The notes below the pieces were generated by a model. It ran no database searches. It saw nothing but the letters and a program-made list of their open reading frames with translations, and was not told the origin of the DNA. A DNA stretch of 63,238 nucleotides, taken from the NCBI RefSeq assembly GCF_001194135.2, contig NC_068996.1, positions 39,385,988-39,449,225 on the forward strand. Reading direction: 5' to 3'. This document shows, piece after piece, positions 541 through 61,400 of the stretch. Origin of the DNA: Octopus bimaculoides. Lineage: Eukaryota. The translations under genes and the position numbers were made by a program. Position 1 is the first letter of the stretch. Each line of letters opens with the position of its first letter.

Positions 541-602
541 GCAGAGTTGGCCTATCTACTTTAGTTTAATATTCTGCTGTTTCAGTTCTCTACTTGTATA
601 TA

Positions 603-1892
603 TTGGGTCATCCCATAAATAATGTGGTTTTTATTATACTTCTTTTATTTTTCAAAATTAAGATAAACAAGAGTTCTTTTTTAATCTAAAATATACTCTC
701 TTTCATTTTCTACAATGCTCTTCCATCTATCTGGTAGACTGACAAGGCACCACCCCTTCCAAAATTCGCTCATCTATGACAAAAAATACTCCTTTACTAC
801 TGTTCTGATCTTGTCTACAGAATTCATATTTTTTCCATCTAAATGATTTTGAAGACTGTGGATAAATGATATTCAGATGGGGCAATGTCCAGTGAATATG
901 ATGCGTGGGGCATCATTTCCCATTCAAACTGCTCCAGCCTTATGAATATCATCCTTACTGCATGTAGCTGAGCATTATCCTGATGAAAGAACACTTTTTG
1001 TTTTGAAACCAAAGATGGTTGTTTTTCTTCTAGTGCTGACTTAAGCCTTTCAAGCTACTCACAGTAGATCTCCTTTGTTATCATTTTGTTTGGGTTTAAA
1101 AGTTCAAAGTGGACTAAACCTTTCATATCCCACCAAACAGATAACAATACCTTACCTGGGTGAAGACCTTCTTCAGTCTATGGTAGCAGTGTTTCTCCTT
1201 TCCCTACTGACTGTCTTCAGCACTTGACATTTTATAGAGAACCCATTTCTTGTCACCAGTCACTATTCAGTTCAAAAGAGGTTCATTCGTGAGACTTGAC
1301 AGCAAAGAAGAGCACACATTCACTCTCTGCCCGCGATTAGACTTGGAAAGTTTGTGAGGAACCCATTGACCCGATTTGCTGACTTTTCCAATAGCACACA
1401 AGTATTGCTGAATGATTGAATGACCAAATCCAAACTTCTCTGCTAGTTCTTCAACGGTTACAATGGGATTTTCTTCCACTAGGGTTTGCAGGACATCCTC
1501 ATCAAGCTCTACAGATCTTCCAGGATAAAGCTTGTCTTCTAGGCTGTAGTTTCCAGCTCAGAATTTCTGGAACTACCATTGACACTGGCTTACACTTATT
1601 GTCCAATCCCCATATACTGCATGAATATTCATTGCACTTTCCGTTGCATTGTTCCCTTTATTGAACTCATAAAGCAAAACATGCCATATATGCTGCTTTT
1701 TCCCTTCTATTATAGCTTTGAAAAAATAACTGTTAAAATTGAACTGCACTCTTCAAAACTTACACTAAGAATAAGGACAAGGTAAAAATTACTACCCACT
1801 TTTATAGCAAATCGATGCAAGTAGCTTATCCCGTCCTCTGACTTTTAGTTCATGCAATTGAAAAAAGCCGCATTATTCATGGGATGACCCAA
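603..1892 (-). mobile_element. Full-length (1290 bp) mariner DNA transposon
   Basis: TIRs ttgggtcatcccataaataatgtggttttt (603-) and aaaaaagccgcattattcatgggatgacccaa (-1892); TA target duplication at 601-602 and 1893-1894; transposase motifs inside. Confidence 0.95.
681..1710 (-). pseudogene. Disrupted mariner DD34D-type transposase
   Basis: Minus-strand motifs HVLLYEFNKGNNATE, WVPHKL, IVTGDKKW, HQDNA, YSLDIAPSEYHL and C-terminal ENEREYILD*. Start ATG mutated to ATA; frameshifts present; third catalytic D reads E. Confidence 0.9.
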
Positions 1893-1942
1893 TATATAAA
1901 CGTTATTGCTTTCTCTCTCTCTCTTTCATATCTATCTATACA

Positions 1943-6480: not shown

Positions 6481-7325
6481 AGGAAAGGCTCGGAGATAAA
6501 AAAAAGGTTTGAGAAAGGAAAATTATATATACTTCTACGAAATGAAATTTCTATATTTGATCGAAGACTGTCTCTTCTTTTGGGAGGTTAAAAATGTCAA
6601 AGAATCAATGCATTCAATTCTTGCTAGTGACCGAGTAAACCCAGCACTGTATGGTTCCTGAAATTGCAATATTAACAATGGTGGCCTAGTGATAAATAAG
6701 AGCTAGTATAGACATGAATGGTGAAAAAATATTTCACTTCTAAAATGAGGTTAACAGCAAAAAAAAAACAAAAAAAAAACTCTGAAAAAATTTTCTTTTC
6801 TAGTATGTCAAAGACTTATTTGTGTTTCACAAAATGTTATTTTGCTATGCTTTCTACTGGAGTGTATAATATTTGTATATAATATTATATATAGGTGTAC
6901 AATATATTTTTTTTATTTTAGTACCATACAGATGTTGGTTTTAATCCCTGCTTCAAGGCATTTTAGTTCATTTTTCAGTCTCTAAGACATCAACCTCAAT
7001 TTCCCATTTATTTCTGTAAATTATTGGGTGTATGACTCTTTTGACTATGCTAAGATTTCTTTTGCGTTGTTGTCTGTAAATCAAGGAAGCTAGGACTTAA
7101 CCTACATTCTGTAGTGCTGTGCAAATGAGGCAGGTTTTTAAAAAATAGTTGCATGTCACTTAAATATCATCATCATCATCGTCATCATCATCATCATCAC
7201 CACCATGCATGTTTTAATATTACATTTTAAAATTATCTCTGCAGGTTTTCTGTAGAAATTAGAACCAGCCCTGATTTACATTATTTACATTTGATGGATA
7301 TTCATCCTCATCTTGTTTGTTGTTA

Positions 7326-7368
7326 ACAACGTTTCGGCTGATATACCCCCCAGCCTTCATCAGGTGTC
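7326..7368 (-). ncRNA. Minimal type-I hammerhead motif (inverted copy)
   Basis: Minus strand gacac-CTGATGA-A-GGCTG..CAGCC-GAAA-CGTT; core perfect, helix I shortened by a 2-nt deletion. Confidence 0.7.
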
Positions 7369-7511
7369 TTGGGCATATGGCGTAGTGGTTAAGAGTGCAG
7401 GCTACTAACCACAAGATTCCAAGTTCTATTCCAGGCAATGACCTGAATAATAATAACAACAACATCAAAAAATACCTTAGGAATGAGAACCCAGGTTCGA
7501 AATTTCTCCAA

Positions 7512-7557
7512 GACACCTGAAGAAGGCTGGAGGGTATATCAGCTGAAACGTTGTGTT
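7512..7557 (+). ncRNA. Minimal type-I hammerhead ribozyme motif
   Basis: Helix I gacac/gtgtt; CUGAAGA 7517-7523 plus extra A; helix II ggctg/cagct; GAAA 7545-7548; palindromic ACGU helix III; GUU cleavage triplet. Confidence 0.75.
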
Positions 7558-7906
7558 AACAACAAACAAGATGAGGACAAATATCTGTCAAATGTAAATA
7601 ATGTAAAAAATTCCTCATCTCTTAAGAATAGAACTGCAACAAAAGAGATCTACTGCAAGCAGCTTGAGTGGCTTAAGTCAGCACTAGAAGAAAAACAGTA
7701 CTGATTTGTTACAATGTTTTGTGTATGAAATATGTCTATGTAATGTTGTAACAAATCTGTGCTGGATCTAATTTTTATAGATAATCTGTAGACATCACTT
7801 TAAAAAGTGATTGAATCGTACTGCTAACACTGGTGAGGAACAGTAATGACTTATACCTTTAAATATATTTGGTAGTAAAAGCAGCAAGTAGACAGAATCA
7901 TTAGAA

Positions 7907-10020: not shown

Positions 10021-10885
10021 AACACCAGTGTTGGTCATATATATCTGTGTGTTTGCGTTTATCCCCACTCACCAACTGACAACCAGTCTTGGTTTGTTTA
10101 TGTTCCCGTAACTTAATGGTTCGGCAAAAGAGACCAACAGAGTAAGTACCAGACTTTAATGCAAAAGTACTGGGATTGATCCTTTGATTAAAATTCCCAC
10201 AAAGCAGTGCCCCAACATGGTCACAGTTCAATGACTGAAATGAGTAAAAAAAAATTTAAAAAAAAACAAGATTTCCTTCTCATGCTACACTGCCATATAC
10301 TACCATACAGTGGTGATGATGGTGGTTGGGATTGTGGTTGTGATGGTGATGGGGTGATGGTGGTGATGGTGGTGGTAGTTGTGGTGGTTGTTGTAGTTAA
10401 CCACACCCACACATACCCACTTAAATAGACATCCATGCCTCACTCAATCTTTCCCATATAAGGATGGCAGCTCTTTAGGTATTTTCCGTTATCCACAGTA
10501 CTAAACAACATGCTGTTAATTGCACTTTTCTGGCATTATCTATGAATGCTACTTAGAAGACCCTACTTTTCAACTGCTTTTGGCAAGCAATACAGCCCTA
10601 CCGCAAGTTGGAGTACTCCAATTTTGGTGGGACGTGTGGGAGTCAGGAATTTACTTGAGAATCCTACTGTAATATTCAATTCTTTAAATTAAAACCTTGT
10701 GTGTTAGCTGACAGAAATTCTCTGCTATCATATCCCTGGTCATTATTTGTTATTAAGACATTTACTGAAGACAGCAAACTGGCACAATTGTTAACATGGG
10801 AGACAAATTACTTGGCAGCATTCCTTCTGGCCTTCATGTTTTGAGTTCAAATTCTGCTGACGCTGACTTCACCTTTCACTGTTAT

Positions 10886-11440
10886 CATCGTCATCATCAT
10901 CATCATCATTTAATGTCTGCTTCCATGCTGGCATGAGTTGGACGGTTTCACTGAGCACTGGCAAGCCAGGAGGCTGCACAAAGCTCCAGTCTGATCTGGA
11001 TGCCCTTCCTAATGCCAACCACTCCAAGAGTGTAGTAGATGCTTTTTATGTGCCACCAGCACGGGGGGCAGTCAGGTGGCACTGGCATCGACCACACTCA
11101 AATGGTGCTTTTTACGTGCCACCGGCACAGAAGCCAGTCAGGCGGTACTGGTATCAACCATGCTTGAATGGTGCTTCTTACATGCCACTGACACGGGAGC
11201 CAGTCAGGTGGCACTGGCATCAAACATGCTCAAATGGTGCTTTTTTACGTGCAACTGGCACGGGTGCCAGTCAAGCGGTACTGGCATCAGCTACGACAAT
11301 GATTTCACTTGACTCAACAGGTCTTCTCAAGCACAGCATATTGCCCGACAATTGAAGGGCACTCTTAAATGGGCCAGTTATGTGACACTGGCATAGGCCA
11401 TAGCTACAATCTCACTTGGCTTGCCAGTTCTTCTCAAGCA
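10886..11440 (-). mobile_element. RTE 3' end with about four ~64-bp internal tandem units
   Basis: (CAT)n tail; units tttacgtgccaccggcacgggagccagtcaggcggtactggc...; same UTR variant as 51349-51842. Confidence 0.8.
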
Positions 11441-43427: not shown

Positions 43428-43886
43428 AATAATAAAGAATTAAAGAAATGAGTTAAAAATGTGGTTTCTGTATAGAGAGTGGTGAAGATGGATGAAGGAT
43501 AGAATGTCTGACCAGTCCTTGGCTGGTACTTATTTTATCAACCCCAAAAAGATGAAAAGTAAAGTCAGCTTTAGTGGAATTTGAACTCTGAATGTAAAAA
43601 TGGATGAAATGCCACTAAGCATTTTGTCTGGTCTGTTAACAACTCTTTTAGTTTGCTGCCAGTTCTGATATTAATAATAAAGAATTAAAGAAATGGGTTA
43701 AGTGTGTGATTTCAGTATAGAGGATGGTGGAGATGGATGATGGATAGAATGTCTGACTTACACACAAAGAATAGCAGATAGTAGTAGAGTCGGTGCATAA
43801 ATGAAGTCAGTCTGAGTGTGCAAGCATGTAAGTGTAACAATATGTTCATATGAGCAAGTAAGCAAATAGGTTGAATAGATTTAAAT

Positions 43887-44530
43887 CAGTGGTTCTCAAC
43901 CATTCTTTGTCTGTAGACCCCTTTGATTCTTATTTTACTCAACTGGACCCTCTTAACCATTTGATGTTTTAAAAATATTATAATATATTTTTATAATTAA
44001 ATAACAGTTTATAGCAGAGACTCCAGCAAAGAAGATCTGAAGAAGGAATTGTAATTCCGAAATATCATCGGACTATAAATAACTAAATTACAACAGGTAT
44101 ATAGTCCATTTTTTGTTCTATAGTGCATTGTTATACCATTCTAAACTTTTTATTCTTTACAAACAATACACAATGCTTCAAGCGAACTACAATACTCTCC
44201 TATTTGTAAGAATTGTTTTAAAAAAATATTAAAATATTTTGAGTTTTGTAGAAATATAACCAGTTTATTGCAAATAACTTTTAACAACTAAATGTTATAT
44301 GAACCCTCAAGGGTCATATGGACCCTAATTAAGAATCACTGCTTTAGGGTATAAGTATTCTAGAACATTGTTCAAGTTATGTAATAACTAGTAATATGAC
44401 AGAGATGGGTAGATTACCCATTTGGATATTGTGATTGCCTCAGTTAATTTATTTGTGAAATATTAATTTTAATGACAGAACCTTATATGGATCCCAAAGG
44501 AGTCGTGTGGACCCCAGTTGAGAACCACTG
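43887..44530. mobile_element. hAT (Charlie-like) MITE remnant(s)
   Basis: cagtggttctcaac (43887) and gttgagaaccactg (to 44530), plus a degenerate internal right end at ~44328-44341; no matching TSD. Confidence 0.6.
44034..44069 (+). ncRNA. Minimal type-I hammerhead ribozyme motif
   Basis: gat-CTGAAGA(44037-44043)-A-GGAAT-tgta-ATTCC-GAAA-TA-TC-atc: perfect core, palindromic AUAU helix III, AUC site, 3-bp helix I. Confidence 0.75.
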
Positions 44531-44664
44531 AACCATTGATCTAGATAGATATGCAGGTAGAGCAAGAAAGGAAATGGAAAGTATGAGAGATTATGTAGTT
44601 GGTTGCTGATGCTGAAGGAGAAAACAGCTCAGTTGGAAAACAAGTTGTTGGTAAAGTAATGTAA

Positions 44665-51348: not shown

Positions 51349-51842
51349 TATCATCATCATCATCATTGCCGTTTAACGTCTGCTTTCCATGCTGGCATGA
51401 GTCGGACGGTTTGACTGAGGGCTGGCAAGCCAGAAGGCTGCACCGGGCTCCAATCTGATCTGGCAAAGTTTCTACAGCTGGATGCCCTTCCAAACGTCAA
51501 CCACTCCAGGAGTGTAGTGGGTGGTACTGGCATCAGCTATGCTTGAATGGTGCTTTTTACATGCCACCAGCATGGGAGCCAGTCAGGCGGTACTGGCAAT
51601 GATCATGCCTGAATAGTGCTTTTTAGATGCCACTGGCACAGAACCAGTCAGGCAGCACTGGCATCGATAACATTTGAATGATGCCTTTTATGTGCCACCG
51701 GCATGGGTGCCAATGAGGCAGTACTCTCATCAGCTACGACAACGGCTTCACTTGACGCGACAGGTCTTCACAAGTGCAGTTTATTGCCCAATGATTGAAA
51801 GGTACTCTTAAATGGGCTGGTTATTCTGCACTGGCAGGTTAT
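51349..51842 (-). mobile_element. RTE 3' end with ~64-bp internal repeats, inserted into the older RTE
   Basis: (CAT)n tail at 51349; UTR matches 10886-11440. Confidence 0.85.
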
Positions 51843-53068
51843 GCTGCTCAATCTGTAGAAAAGGCATAGATTAAAACTCCATAAGATGCACCCGGTGTAA
51901 GCTTTGGACACATAAAAAGGTGTAGCAATAGTAGAGGAAGGTTAACAGGGAAAATAGCTTCTGTATGTGGAAGATGCACAGGTACAATTAAAGCTGAAAA
52001 TGGGCAGAAAATAGACATCATCAACTGCCAGGTGGGGTAAGCTAGAGGCAGTAGATAGCTTCTGTTATCAAGGTGACCAAGTTAATAAATAGCTCTGAGA
52101 GTGTAGCTATGAGAATAAGATTAGGCTGGGCAAAGTTCAGAGAGCTTCTACCTCTGCTGGCAACAAAGGGCCGCTTTTTCAGAGTGAAAGGTAGAGTGTA
52201 TGATACCTGTGTGTGAACAGCTATGTTGCATAGCAGTGAAACATGGGCTGTGACAGCCGAGGACATGTGTAGGTTTAAAAGAAACAAAGTCAGTATGCTT
52301 TGCTGGATGTGCAATGTCAGTGTGTATGTTTGACAGAGTGTAAGTTAGTCATAAGAGGCATTAGATGTGGTGTGCAAGAGAGACGGCTGCACTAGTATGG
52401 TCATGTGATGCATATGAATGAGGCCAACTGTGTAAAGAAGTGTTGATCTCTGACTGTGAAGGGAACCTGTGGTAGAGGTAGACCCAGGAAGATATGAAAT
52501 GAGTTGTTGAAGCATGATCTTTGAACTTTGAGCTTCACCGAGGCAATGACTAGCGACCGAGACCTTTGGCAATATGCTGTGCTTAAGAAGACCAGTCAAG
52601 CCAAGTGAAATCGTAGTTGTGACTGATGCTGGTGTCATGTAACTGGCACCCATGCTGGTAGTACGTAAAGAGCACCTTTTGAGCATTGGGCATCATGGAG
52701 GCAAAGTGTCTGAGTTCCTTTCAAGCACTGGGCCTCACAGAGGCGAGTTCCTTTTGAGTGCTGGGCCTCATGGAGGCAATGACCAAGATCTTTGGCATTA
52801 TTTCATGCTTGAGAAGAAGACCTATCAACCTGAGCAAAATCACAGTCATGGCAGATACTGGTGTCACGGAAGTGGCACCCATATCAGTGGCACATGAAAG
52901 CACCCATTACACTCTTGGGCATCCTGCCATAAAAAGGCATCCAGCCATAGAAACCATGCCAAATCTGACAGGAGTCTGGTACAGCCTTCCAGCTTACCAG
53001 CCCTGGTCAAACCGTCTAACCCATGCCAGCATGGACAACAGACGTTAAATGATGATGATGATGATGAT
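51843..53068 (+). mobile_element. 5'-truncated RTE LINE: PHD-like finger, RT end, C-terminal domain, UTR and (GAT)n tail
   Basis: CSIC..CTRCKLWTH..C..CGRC..LEAVDSFCY.GD..LHSSETW..GRGRPRK with stops and frameshifts. Confidence 0.9.
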
Positions 53069-61101: not shown

Positions 61102-61400
61102 ATCATCATCGTCGTTTAACGTCTGCTTTCCATGCTAGCATGGGTTGGACGATTTAACTGAGGACTGGTGAAACCAGATGGCTACACCTGGCTCCAATCT
61201 GATTTGGCAGAGTTTCTACAGCTGGATGCCCTTCCTAACGCCAACCACTCTGAGAGTGTACTGGGTGCTTTTACGTGCCACCCGCACGAGGGCCAGTCAG
61301 GAGGTACTGGCAACGGCCACGCTCGAAATGGTGTATTTTACATGCCACCTGCACAGGAGCCAGTCCAGCGGCACTGGCAACGATCTCGCTCTCATTACCC
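61102..61400 (-). mobile_element. Young RTE 3' end
   Basis: Closely matches 15988-16280. Confidence 0.9.

What the first reader, a model, noticed from the sequence alone, without database searches (positions are those of the whole stretch)
7276..7638. tRNA-headed SINE-like element carrying a hammerhead ribozyme and a PLE-style inverted 5' arm
Seen: a tRNA-like Pol III head (7371-7435), an (AAT/AAC) spacer, a minimal type-I hammerhead (7512-7557) and a 3' hairpin, with no T4 terminator on the plus strand. A ~98-bp inverted copy of the hammerhead tail is fused directly to the first base of the head through GGG microhomology. No RTE-type (GAT)n tail or TSD is evident. Known: minimal HHRs with a palindromic helix III and inverted partial terminal duplications are typical of Penelope-like elements, and HHR-containing SINE/satellite units exist in schistosomes, newts and crickets. 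Inference: this is a non-autonomous Pol III retroelement copied by PLE rather than LINE machinery. I do not know of such a family described from cephalopods.
Basis: partly seen in the sequence, partly recalled or inferred. Interest (0 to 1): 0.9.

Follow-up and report, generated by a model that had tools for sequence, protein, structure and literature searches.

The report
Octopod retroposon scar with Penelope-type hammerhead
This is a decayed cluster of retroposon copies in an octopod genome that carries a Penelope-type minimal hammerhead ribozyme motif next to a tRNA-like SINE head; the motif is real, but this kind of element is already known and no second head-plus-ribozyme copy was found to show it is a family.

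Summary
Arms 7275-7372 and 7508-7607 are inverted copies (91 of 98 aligned bases identical). Each carries a minimal type-I hammerhead, at 7512-7557 (+) and 7326-7365 (-). My descriptor gave no hit this good in 400 shuffles. The same core and helix II occur in 18 invertebrate-derived metagenome contigs, one of them 1.5 kb downstream of an RT+GIY-YIG (Penelope-like) ORF. The head (7371-7443) has an exact A box and a two-mismatch B box at the spacing seen in other SINE heads here, but tRNA finders reject it.

The inverted copy continues to a (GAT)n tail (7166-7203, minus strand), the same kind of tail as the window's abundant LINE/SINE family. A third, older tail copy lies at 7719-7863.

The best reading is one double-primed insertion of a head-plus-hammerhead-plus-(GAT)n RNA next to an older copy. 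The hammerhead module is of Penelope type. Which reverse transcriptase moved the element is unresolved, and the tail points to the LINE.

I found no other copy in any sequence I could reach, so head-tail linkage as a family is untested. A tRNA-derived SINE with a hammerhead is already known from schistosomes (Sm-alpha). Interest is modest.

The parts
7156..7165 (.). Candidate left target-site duplication, TCACTTAAAT (weak)
   Evidence: Read directly from the sequence. It resembles TCTCTTAAGAAT at 7618-7629. The sequence is AT-rich and the match is not statistically convincing.
7166..7203 (-). (GAT)n 3' tail of the inverted copy, seen as (ATC)n on the plus strand
   Evidence: (D1). Older copy B ends in a decayed version of the same tail. 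The two tails point in opposite directions, so they belong to the copies rather than to a target microsatellite.
7204..7274 (-). Distal tail of the inverted copy, absent from the direct copy
   Evidence: Alignments. It is 73% identical to copy B at 7754-7826.
7275..7372 (-). Inverted arm: a 5'-truncated copy of the hammerhead-bearing body
   Evidence: 91 of 98 aligned bases are identical to 7508-7607.
7326..7365 (-). Twin minimal hammerhead: CUGAUGA, bulged A, GGCUG/CAGCC with G10.1-C11.1, GAAAC, GUU. Helix I is reduced to 2 bp by a 2-nt indel.
7371..7443 (+). Degenerate tRNA-derived SINE head. A box at 7378-7388, B-like box at 7422-7432.
   Evidence: Searches support it. Searches are negative for a tRNA call or cloverleaf fold.
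7444..7507 (+). Linker: (AAT)3(AAC)3..A6 at 7446-7472, then 34 nt containing GGTTCGAAA (7494-7502)
   Evidence: No homologue in the window.
7508..7607 (+). Direct arm: the hammerhead-bearing body of the head-linked copy
7512..7557 (+). Minimal type-I hammerhead of the Penelope class, with predicted cleavage after U7552. The 10.1-11.1 pair is G-U, through a CpG-to-TpG change.
   Evidence: 0 hits in 400 shuffles; the MFE fold reproduces helices I and II; same core in 18 metagenome contigs
7570..7619 (+). 3' hairpin GATGAGGA / TCCTCATC. Its 3' half lies in 11 nt of filler (7608-7618) just beyond the arm.
   Evidence: 7610-7623 resembles the reverse complement of 7566-7580.
7618..7629 (.). Candidate right target-site duplication, TCTCTTAAGAAT (weak)
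7619..7714 (+). 96-nt fragment of a mariner transposase gene, from the same family as the copy at 600-1900 (-)
   Evidence: 90% identity over 60 nt, E = 1e-17; extended alignment
7719..7863 (+). Older 5'-truncated tail copy (copy B) of the same family, ending in a decayed (GAT)n (GGTGAGGAACAGTAATGAC)
   Evidence: It is 66-73% identical to the inverted copy and significantly more diverged than the arms (Fisher p = 9e-4 and 5e-5).

Best explanation
The locus records at least two insertions of one retroposon family.

The retroposon body carries a Penelope-type minimal hammerhead. Its 3' end is about 100 nt of distal tail followed by (GAT)n.

The younger insertion (about 7166-7618) came from an RNA that ran, 5' to 3': degenerate tRNA-derived head, A-rich linker, hammerhead body, distal tail, (GAT)n. 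Reverse transcription was primed twice.
- One cDNA started at the (GAT)n tail. It stopped just upstream of the hammerhead and is now the minus-strand copy 7372->7166.
- A second cDNA started inside the RNA, near the position now at 7607. It ran to the RNA's first base, G7371, and is now the plus-strand copy 7371-7607.
- The two ends were joined over a GG microhomology. The roughly 100 nt copied by both cDNAs became the inverted arms.

This is 'twin priming' in LINE terms and 'inverted 5'-truncated copy' in PLE terms. The insertion landed beside an older, decayed tail copy (7719-7863) and a mariner fragment.

By sequence the hammerhead belongs to the PLE minimal class. That class can form an active site only when two copies pair through the ACGU palindrome. 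Both copies here have decayed: G-U at 10.1-11.1 in one, helix I lost in the other.

The module is of PLE origin. The enzyme that copied this RNA is not settled; the (GAT)n tail points to the LINE that moves the other (GAT)n elements in this genome.

Shown: the anatomy, the motif class, the tails, and the relative ages of the copies. Inferred: the single RNA, the double priming, Pol III transcription, and the mobiliser.
For: - Arms, junction and head start.
- Only the inverted copy carries the distal tail and (GAT)n. The direct copy stops at 7607 and runs into filler and a mariner piece. This is the asymmetry expected if the direct copy was primed internally.
- The head begins exactly at the inner junction, as expected for a cDNA that ran off the 5' end of the RNA.
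- Copy B is significantly older than the arms, so the tail-bearing unit inserted more than once.
- Hammerhead: it matches the descriptor with 0 hits in 400 shuffles. The same CCUGAnGAAGGCUG..CAGCCGAAACG core occurs in 18 metagenome contigs. Helix I pairs more often than in cross-paired controls: 64% versus 13% reach 3 bp or more.
- One of those contigs (L006) has an RVT_1 + GIY-YIG ORF 1.5 kb upstream on the same strand.
- The class features match PMC4209133.
- Head: A and B boxes 44 nt apart, as in other SINE heads here; 0 such pairs in 200 shuffles. It is similar to another SINE family's head.
- (GAT)n is the tail of at least 10 LINE/SINE 3' ends in the window. One of them lies about 820 nt downstream of a LINE RT C-terminus, with the same spacing in L003.
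Against: - There is only one head-linked copy. No other copy of arm, head or linker was found in the window, in the Argonauta locus or in other loci. A single RNA carrying both head and hammerhead is therefore inferred from one event.
- The TSD is weak.
- The last ~60 nt before (GAT)n do not match the 3' end of the abundant (GAT)n family, so LINE recognition is not demonstrated.
- The inverted copy has a T4 run (minus strand, 7232-7229) 26 nt before its tail. That would stop Pol III short of the tail if it was present in the source RNA.
- An older tail copy of the same family lying 110 nt away is a coincidence this model does not explain.
- Twin priming is documented for L1 (my own knowledge), not for this LINE clade.
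Confidence: 0.42

Rival explanations
1. This is one copy of a true SINE family: tRNA head transcribed by Pol III, linker, and a PLE-derived hammerhead tail. The family is mobilised by a Penelope-like element, and the PLE's peculiar integration produces the inverted 5'-truncated arm.
For: - PLE-class minimal hammerhead (PMC4209133).
- An inverted 5'-truncated copy abutting the 5' end is the described PLE insertion pattern (PMC8557442).
- Dual minimal hammerheads on opposite strands are reported for truncated PLEs (PMC4209133).
- Non-autonomous PLE derivatives are known: MRC1 in Chlamydomonas (PMC8557442) and animal retrozymes (bioRxiv 10.64898/2026.07.22.740005).
- There is no T4 run between the head and 7717 on the plus strand.
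Against: - In the PLE pattern both copies keep their 3' ends. Here the head-linked copy lacks the distal tail and (GAT)n.
- The (GAT)n tail is the LINE-type tail of this genome.
- There is no PLE ORF in the window, and no PLE sharing the tail.
- There is no second head-plus-hammerhead copy.
- In the one PLE-linked family I could delimit, the repeat ends about 15 nt after the cleavage site, unlike the ~155-nt tail here.
Confidence: 0.22
2. Nesting or chimera without a family. Two 5'-truncated, hammerhead-bearing retro-copies lie head to head. The 100-135 nt tRNA-SINE piece between them is unrelated. It either inserted into the centre of the palindrome or was picked up by template switching from the element's RNA to a SINE RNA.
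For: - The (AAT)n(AAC)n..A6 tract directly after the tRNA part looks like the 3' tail of a simple SINE.
- The head resembles heads of other SINE families that carry quite different bodies.
- Two of the three tail copies have no head.
- The same locus also holds a captured 96-nt mariner piece, so mosaic joining did occur here.
Against: - The head's first base coincides with the inner end of the arm. For an independent insertion that would be a coincidence.
- No clear TSD flanks the head-plus-linker; the only candidates are CTTGG and CTTAGG.
- No separate copy of this head-plus-linker is in the window.
Confidence: 0.23
3. An old inverted duplication, not a double-primed insertion. A single ancient palindrome of the tail (7166-7372 against 7508-7607 plus 7757-7863) was later split by an insertion. 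Gene conversion then homogenised its inner part, so that part looks younger.
For: The outer parts of the two sides are 73% identical and the inner parts 93%. Both outer ends carry (GAT)n-like tails pointing outward.
Against: 38 nt (7719-7756) of copy B duplicate 7570-7607 at only 66-71% identity, so B overlaps the direct arm rather than continuing it. The model does not explain the head at the centre.
Confidence: 0.08

Closest known systems
Minimal hammerhead ribozymes of Penelope-like elements (Cervera & de la Pena 2014, PMC4209133)
   Same: Type I topology. [quoted passage not shown] Two motifs lie on opposite strands 147 nt apart. The core and helix II sequence are the same as in contigs from other invertebrates, one of them near an RT+GIY-YIG ORF.
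   Different: No PLE ORF or pseudo-LTR is present here. The motif sits about 155 nt upstream of a (GAT)n tail and downstream of a tRNA-like head. Activity is untested, and both copies carry decay mutations.
Sm-alpha / Sj-alpha SINE-like retroposons of schistosomes (PMC2770079 and references therein)
   Same: A tRNA-derived SINE-like head combined with a hammerhead motif in the body.
   Different: Sm-alpha carries a canonical hammerhead that Rfam detects, and it has over 10,000 copies, partly in tandem. Here the motif is the minimal class without helix III, Rfam finds nothing, only one head-linked copy is known, and there is no tandem array.
Animal non-LTR retrozymes (PMC7229834; bioRxiv 10.64898/2026.07.22.740005)
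   Same: Short non-autonomous elements with type I hammerheads, thought to derive from PLE pseudo-LTRs.
   Different: Retrozymes are head-to-tail tandem repeats of about 170-400 bp that yield circular RNAs. This locus has an inverted repeat, not a tandem one, together with a tRNA-like head and a microsatellite tail.
5'-inverted LINE insertions by twin priming, and 5' chimeras made by template switching (L1; from my own knowledge of Ostertag & Kazazian 2001 and Buzdin et al. 2002, not checked here)
   Same: An inverted 5' segment that reaches the RNA's 5' end, joined by microhomology to a direct 3' segment that alone carries the tail. The overlap of the two cDNAs appears as an inverted duplication.
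   Different: This is documented for L1 with poly(A) tails. Here the tail is (GAT)n, the partner LINE is unidentified, and the TSD is weak.
Composite tRNA-SINEs whose bodies are built from pieces of other retroelements (Kojima 2018, PMC5786205)
   Same: A head, body and tail of independent origin, with a microsatellite-type tail as in RTE-mobilised SINEs.
   Different: That survey found bodies derived only from RTE and Vingi 5' UTRs. A PLE-derived hammerhead body is not among them.

Membership tests
PLE-type minimal hammerhead (min-HHR) | Conserved core: C3 U4 G5 A6 N7 G8 A9 ... G12 A13 A14 A15.1 ... U16.1 H17 | tested here: met
   CUGAAGA..GAAA..C-G-U-U at 7517-7552 (+), and CUGAUGA..GAAA..CGUU in the minus-strand copy
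PLE-type minimal hammerhead (min-HHR) | [quoted passage not shown] | tested here: met
   Bulged A7524 in both copies. The pair is G-C in the minus-strand copy and G-U in the plus-strand copy, through CAGCCG changing to CAGCTG.
PLE-type minimal hammerhead (min-HHR) | No helix III or loop 3; positions 15.2-16.2 palindromic, so that two copies can pair | tested here: met
   A-C-G-U at 7548-7551 with no loop
PLE-type minimal hammerhead (min-HHR) | Helix I of 4-5 bp and an extended helix II | tested here: inconclusive
   Plus-strand copy: helix I 5 bp, helix II 6 bp. Minus-strand copy: helix I only 2 bp. Helix II is shorter than the 7-8 bp reported for schistosomes (PMC4209133).
PLE-type minimal hammerhead (min-HHR) | Located in the pseudo-LTR of an element encoding RT + GIY-YIG | tested here: not met
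   tblastn with a PLE ORF finds nothing in the window. The association is seen only in a foreign contig, L006. Most reported motifs are likewise solitary (PMC4209133).
PLE-type minimal hammerhead (min-HHR) | Self-cleavage, as a dimer | not testable with these tools
   Needs in vitro transcription of monomer and dimer constructs.
tRNA-derived SINE (SINE2) | Internal Pol III promoter: A box and B box at tRNA spacing | tested here: met
   A box exact at 7378-7388. B box with 2 mismatches at 7422-7432, starting 44 nt after the A box. 0 such pairs in 200 shuffles, and the same spacing in other SINE heads of the window.
tRNA-derived SINE (SINE2) | Recognisable tRNA cloverleaf or score | tested here: not met
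   ARAGORN finds none, even at an 80% threshold where two other SINE heads are found. Rfam gives no tRNA hit at E<=10. The MFE fold is not a cloverleaf.
tRNA-derived SINE (SINE2) | Many dispersed copies sharing head, body and tail, each with a TSD | tested here: inconclusive
   No further copy in 58.7 kb of window sequence or in about 180 kb of fetched loci. No octopod genome could be searched. The TSD is weak.
tRNA-derived SINE (SINE2) | 3' tail shared with a partner LINE | tested here: inconclusive
   The (GAT)n repeat is shared with the window's LINE 3' ends, but the preceding ~60 nt are not.
PLE-style insertion architecture | An inverted 5'-truncated copy immediately adjacent to the 5' end of the main copy | tested here: met
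   Minus-strand copy 7372->7166 abuts head base 7371 (PMC8557442).
PLE-style insertion architecture | Partial tandem (pseudo-LTR), with both copies retaining the 3' end | tested here: not met
   There is no direct repeat of the unit. The head-linked copy lacks the distal tail and (GAT)n.
Non-LTR retrozyme | Head-to-tail tandem repeats of about 170-400 bp, each with a hammerhead | tested here: not met
   The only direct repeat at the element is the (ATC)n microsatellite, and the two hammerheads are on opposite strands.

The most novel reading that the evidence does not exclude
Octopods harbour a Pol III-driven tRNA-SINE family whose body is a Penelope-derived minimal hammerhead module, but whose 3' end is the (GAT)n tail used by the resident RTE-like LINE. 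That would be a ribozyme module moved from the PLE world into a LINE-mobilised SINE. It would show that minimal hammerheads spread as independent passengers between retroelement classes, and it would be the first such family in cephalopods.
Probability: 0.2. Interest if true: 0.55.

Novelty: new member of a known kind. Interest (0 to 1): 0.32.

Why it matters
If the head-to-hammerhead linkage holds genome-wide, this would be a second, independent case after schistosome Sm-alpha of a tRNA-SINE carrying a hammerhead, and the first with the PLE minimal class. It would give a testable system for two questions: whether minimal hammerheads serve their carrier or merely ride on it, and whether a PLE or a LINE copies them.

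If the linkage does not hold, the locus is ordinary debris of PLE-derived and SINE sequences. One practical point stands either way: Rfam models miss this ribozyme class, so cephalopod annotations will overlook it. A second, independent motif at 44034-44069 suggests it is not rare in this genome.

Tried and rejected
Searches for more copies that found nothing:
- blastn and nhmmer of head, linker, arms and a three-copy tail profile against the window and all fetched loci found only the three local copies.
- Translating the ORFs that cross the element and searching the protein collection gave no hit. The ORF is also not on record by exact sequence.
- An exact 22-mer scan of JGI metagenomes found nothing.
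- The pattern scan of GTDB genomes found nothing.

Attempts to reach octopod DNA through TE proteins:
- An RT query gave ENA contigs of other animals and one Argonauta hians locus. That locus shares SINEs with the window but lacks the element.
- A mariner query gave only 5 JGI contigs, which share nothing but the mariner.
- There is no PLE ORF in the window or in the Argonauta locus.

Tools that failed on the motifs:
- Rfam at gathering thresholds and at E<=10 gave no hammerhead and no tRNA hit.
- ARAGORN at default and relaxed thresholds did not call the head.

Ideas rejected:
- The (ATC)n at 7166-7203 is not a target microsatellite of a PLE insertion, because the two tails point outward in opposite orientations.
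- The left flank is not recognisably mariner, so the mariner copy cannot serve as an empty-site reference.
- The element body is not a relative of the abundant SINE I call SINE-X. Only the heads are similar.
- Paper searches with stretches of the sequence itself found nothing relevant.
Full report
WHAT IS THERE

The window is a draft octopod scaffold with 13 N gaps and 37% GC. A 20-kb locus of Argonauta hians shares several SINE families with it at 70-91% identity.

At the reported site, the repeat finder and blastn confirm two inverted arms, 7275-7372 and 7508-7607. They share 91 matches and 7 mismatches, 6 of them transitions, plus one 2-nt indel. The arms are separated by 135 nt.

THE HAMMERHEAD

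I wrote a descriptor from the published definition of the minimal hammerhead of Penelope-like elements (PLEs). The definition is: helix I, CUGANGA, an optional unpaired base, helix II, GAAA, a 15.2-16.2 pair with no loop or a very short one, U16.1, H17, then the return strand of helix I (PMC4209133).

The parts are GACAC | CUGAAGA | A | GGCUGG-loop-UCAGCU | GAAA | C G U U | GUGUU, with cleavage predicted after U7552.

It also returns the twin in the other arm, 7326-7365 (-). The twin has CUGAUGA and a G10.1-C11.1 pair, but helix I is cut to 2 bp by the 2-nt indel.

A third, independent motif appears at 44034-44069 (+).

In 400 dinucleotide shuffles of the window no hit had helix I of at least 4 bp. 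Hits with helix I of at least 2 bp came at 0.0175 per shuffle.

The minimum-energy fold of 7508-7560 is exactly helices I and II. The energy is unremarkable, at z = -1.2.

Rfam finds no hammerhead even at E<=10. That is expected for a motif without helix III.

The features that Cervera and de la Pena list as not imposed by their descriptor yet recurrent are all present (PMC4209133). They are the extra base between positions 9 and 10.1, G10.1-C11.1, and the palindromic 15.2-16.2.

THE SAME MOTIF ELSEWHERE

A pattern built from the core and helix II (CCTGANGAAGGCTG N6-14 CAGCYGAAACG) has 23 fixed bases plus one two-fold (Y) position. It matched 18 JGI/ENA metagenome contigs and no bacterial or archaeal genome.

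The contigs are animal-like DNA falling into several unrelated sequence families.

Helix I, which the pattern does not fix, pairs over at least 3 bp in 64% of distinct sequences. When 5' and 3' strands are cross-paired between sequences the figure is 13%. The paired sequences differ between families: GCC/GGC, UUCC/GGAA, CGGC/GCUG, and GACAC/GUGUU here.

In contig L006 the motif lies 1.5 kb downstream, on the same strand, of a 477-aa ORF with RVT_1 and GIY-YIG domains. That is the PLE domain pair.

So by sequence the motif belongs to the PLE minimal-hammerhead class.

THE HEAD

ARAGORN finds no tRNA in the window. It does not find the head at an 80% threshold either, where it does find two other SINE heads. 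Rfam gives no tRNA hit, and the head does not fold as a cloverleaf.

Three things still support a tRNA origin.
- It has an exact A box (TGGCGTAGTGG, 7378-7388) and a B box with two mismatches (AGTTCTATTCC, 7422-7432) that starts 44 nt later.
- A strict A box plus a B box with at most 2 mismatches occurs four times in the window, three of them with this same 44-nt spacing, and never in 200 shuffles.
- The head aligns with the heads of other SINE families of the window. Against the consensus of an abundant family I call SINE-X, the score is 33 where the 95th percentile of shuffles is 24. The bodies are unrelated.

I accept it as a degenerate tRNA-derived SINE head.

Aligning the reverse complement of the left side with the right side shows that the inverted copy does not end at 7275. 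It continues through about 70 nt of distal tail to (GAT)n, which appears as (ATC)n at 7166-7203 on the plus strand.

The direct, head-linked copy stops at 7607. It is followed by 11 nt of filler and then by a 96-nt piece of a mariner transposase gene (7619-7714). That piece is 90% identical over its central 60 nt to the mariner copy at 600-1900.

A third copy of the tail (copy B, 7719-7863, plus strand) ends in a decayed GAT run. It is only 66-73% identical to the inverted copy. That is significantly more diverged than the arms (Fisher p = 9e-4 and 5e-5), and it overlaps the end of the direct arm by 38 nt. It is therefore a separate, older insertion.

The two tails point outward in opposite orientations. 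They belong to the copies, not to a target microsatellite.

(GAT)n is also the tail of at least 10 copies of the family '...CCCATGCCAGCATGGAAAGCAGACGTTAAAC(GAT)n' in this window. One copy, ending at 53068, lies about 820 nt downstream of a LINE RT C-terminus. The spacing is the same in contig L003. The window's RT fragment is an ordinary RVT_1 LINE type. Its RTE affiliation is my judgement from the motifs and was not tested.

HOW IT MOST LIKELY AROSE

The asymmetry is the key observation. One copy has the tail but no head. The other has the head but not the distal tail. They overlap by about 100 nt, and the head's first base sits at the junction, which has a GG microhomology.

This is what double priming on one RNA produces. 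One cDNA starts from the 3' tail. A second is primed internally and runs to the RNA's 5' end. This is twin priming as described for L1 (my own knowledge). PLE insertions also show an inverted 5'-truncated copy at the 5' end (PMC8557442), but in that pattern both copies keep their 3' ends, which is not the case here.

I therefore favour a single double-primed insertion of an RNA with the order head, linker, hammerhead body, tail. The hammerhead module is of PLE origin. The enzyme is unresolved: the motif and the inverted arm point to a PLE, and the tail points to the LINE.

WEAK POINTS

- The TSD candidate is unconvincing (TCACTTAAAT 7156-7165 against TCTCTTAAGAAT 7618-7629).
- The ~60 nt before (GAT)n do not match the LINE 3' end.
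- The inverted copy has a T4 run 26 nt before its tail.
- An older copy of the same family lies 110 nt away, and the model does not explain that.

WHAT COULD NOT BE TESTED

Testing it needs a genome-wide search, and no octopod genome was searchable.

Every route to more copies failed.
- There is nothing else in the window or the fetched loci.
- There are no protein-level traces.
- There is no exact match in metagenomes.
- TE-protein look-ups gave only non-octopod contigs and one Argonauta locus without the element.

Of three local tail copies, one has a head. That fits either 5' truncation of a SINE or a one-off chimera.

COMPARISON WITH WHAT IS KNOWN

- Minimal hammerheads are reported to be massive and widespread in metazoan genomes, mostly solitary and sometimes paired on opposite strands (PMC4209133).
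- Animal retrozymes are regarded as non-autonomous PLE derivatives (PMC7229834; bioRxiv 10.64898/2026.07.22.740005), but they are tandem repeats.
- Sm-alpha and Sj-alpha of schistosomes are tRNA-derived SINE-like elements carrying hammerheads (PMC2770079).
- SINE bodies assembled from pieces of other retroelements are well documented (PMC5786205).
- A full-text search for hammerhead ribozymes and octopus found no report for cephalopods.

VERDICT

The thing is a new member of a known kind, at best a new SINE family, and possibly only debris. Interest is modest.

Noticed in passing
window 44034-44069 (+), inside 43886-44531: A third, independent minimal hammerhead-like motif: GAU|CUGAAGA|A|GGAAU-UGUA-AUUCC|GAAA|U-A|U|C|AUC. 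It lies within a ~650-bp element bounded by a perfect 15-nt inverted repeat, TCAGTGGTTCTCAAC / GTTGAGAACCACTGA. The chance expectation for a hit of this quality is about 0.02 per window.
   Followed up: partly
window 600-1900 (-): A mariner-like transposon copy with ~30-nt terminal inverted repeats (TATATATTGGGTCATCCCATGAATAATG...) and a transposase ORF broken by stops. Related copies at 79-83% identity occur in two JGI metagenome contigs, L022 and L023.
   Followed up: partly
window, e.g. 53048-53068 (+), 10884-10910 (-), 51350-51367 (-), 61102-61113 (-): At least 10 copies of a retroposon 3' end, '...CCCATGCCAGCATGGAAAGCAGACGTTAAAC(GAT)n'. At 52.1-53.07 kb it follows a LINE RT C-terminus by about 820 nt, and the same layout occurs in ENA contig L003. 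This is the dominant LINE/SINE tail type of the window.
   Followed up: partly
L004-L021 (metagenome contigs): 18 animal-like contigs from JGI/ENA metagenomes carry the same hammerhead core and helix II, CCUGAnGAAGGCUG..CAGCCGAAACG. Several have G at position 17 or C at 16.1 and are probably dead copies. In one family the shared repeat ends about 15 nt after the cleavage site.
   Followed up: partly
window 7608-7625 compared with 7566-7580: The filler after the direct arm (AAATTCCTCATCTCTT) resembles the reverse complement of 7566-7580 of the same arm and gives the 8-bp '3' hairpin'. It may be a small snap-back at the priming site.
   Followed up: no
window 7696-7714 / 7746-7764: A 19-nt hairpin (89% complementary) joins the end of the mariner fragment to the start of older copy B. 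Rfam gives only sub-threshold microRNA-like hits there, for example mir-499 at 20.6 bits against a gathering score of 60.
   Followed up: no
window 39374, 48442 (+), 45433, 27234 (-): Other tRNA-derived SINE heads whose A and B boxes start 43-44 nt apart, each followed by a different body. At least five distinct tRNA-SINE head types occur in 63 kb.
   Followed up: partly
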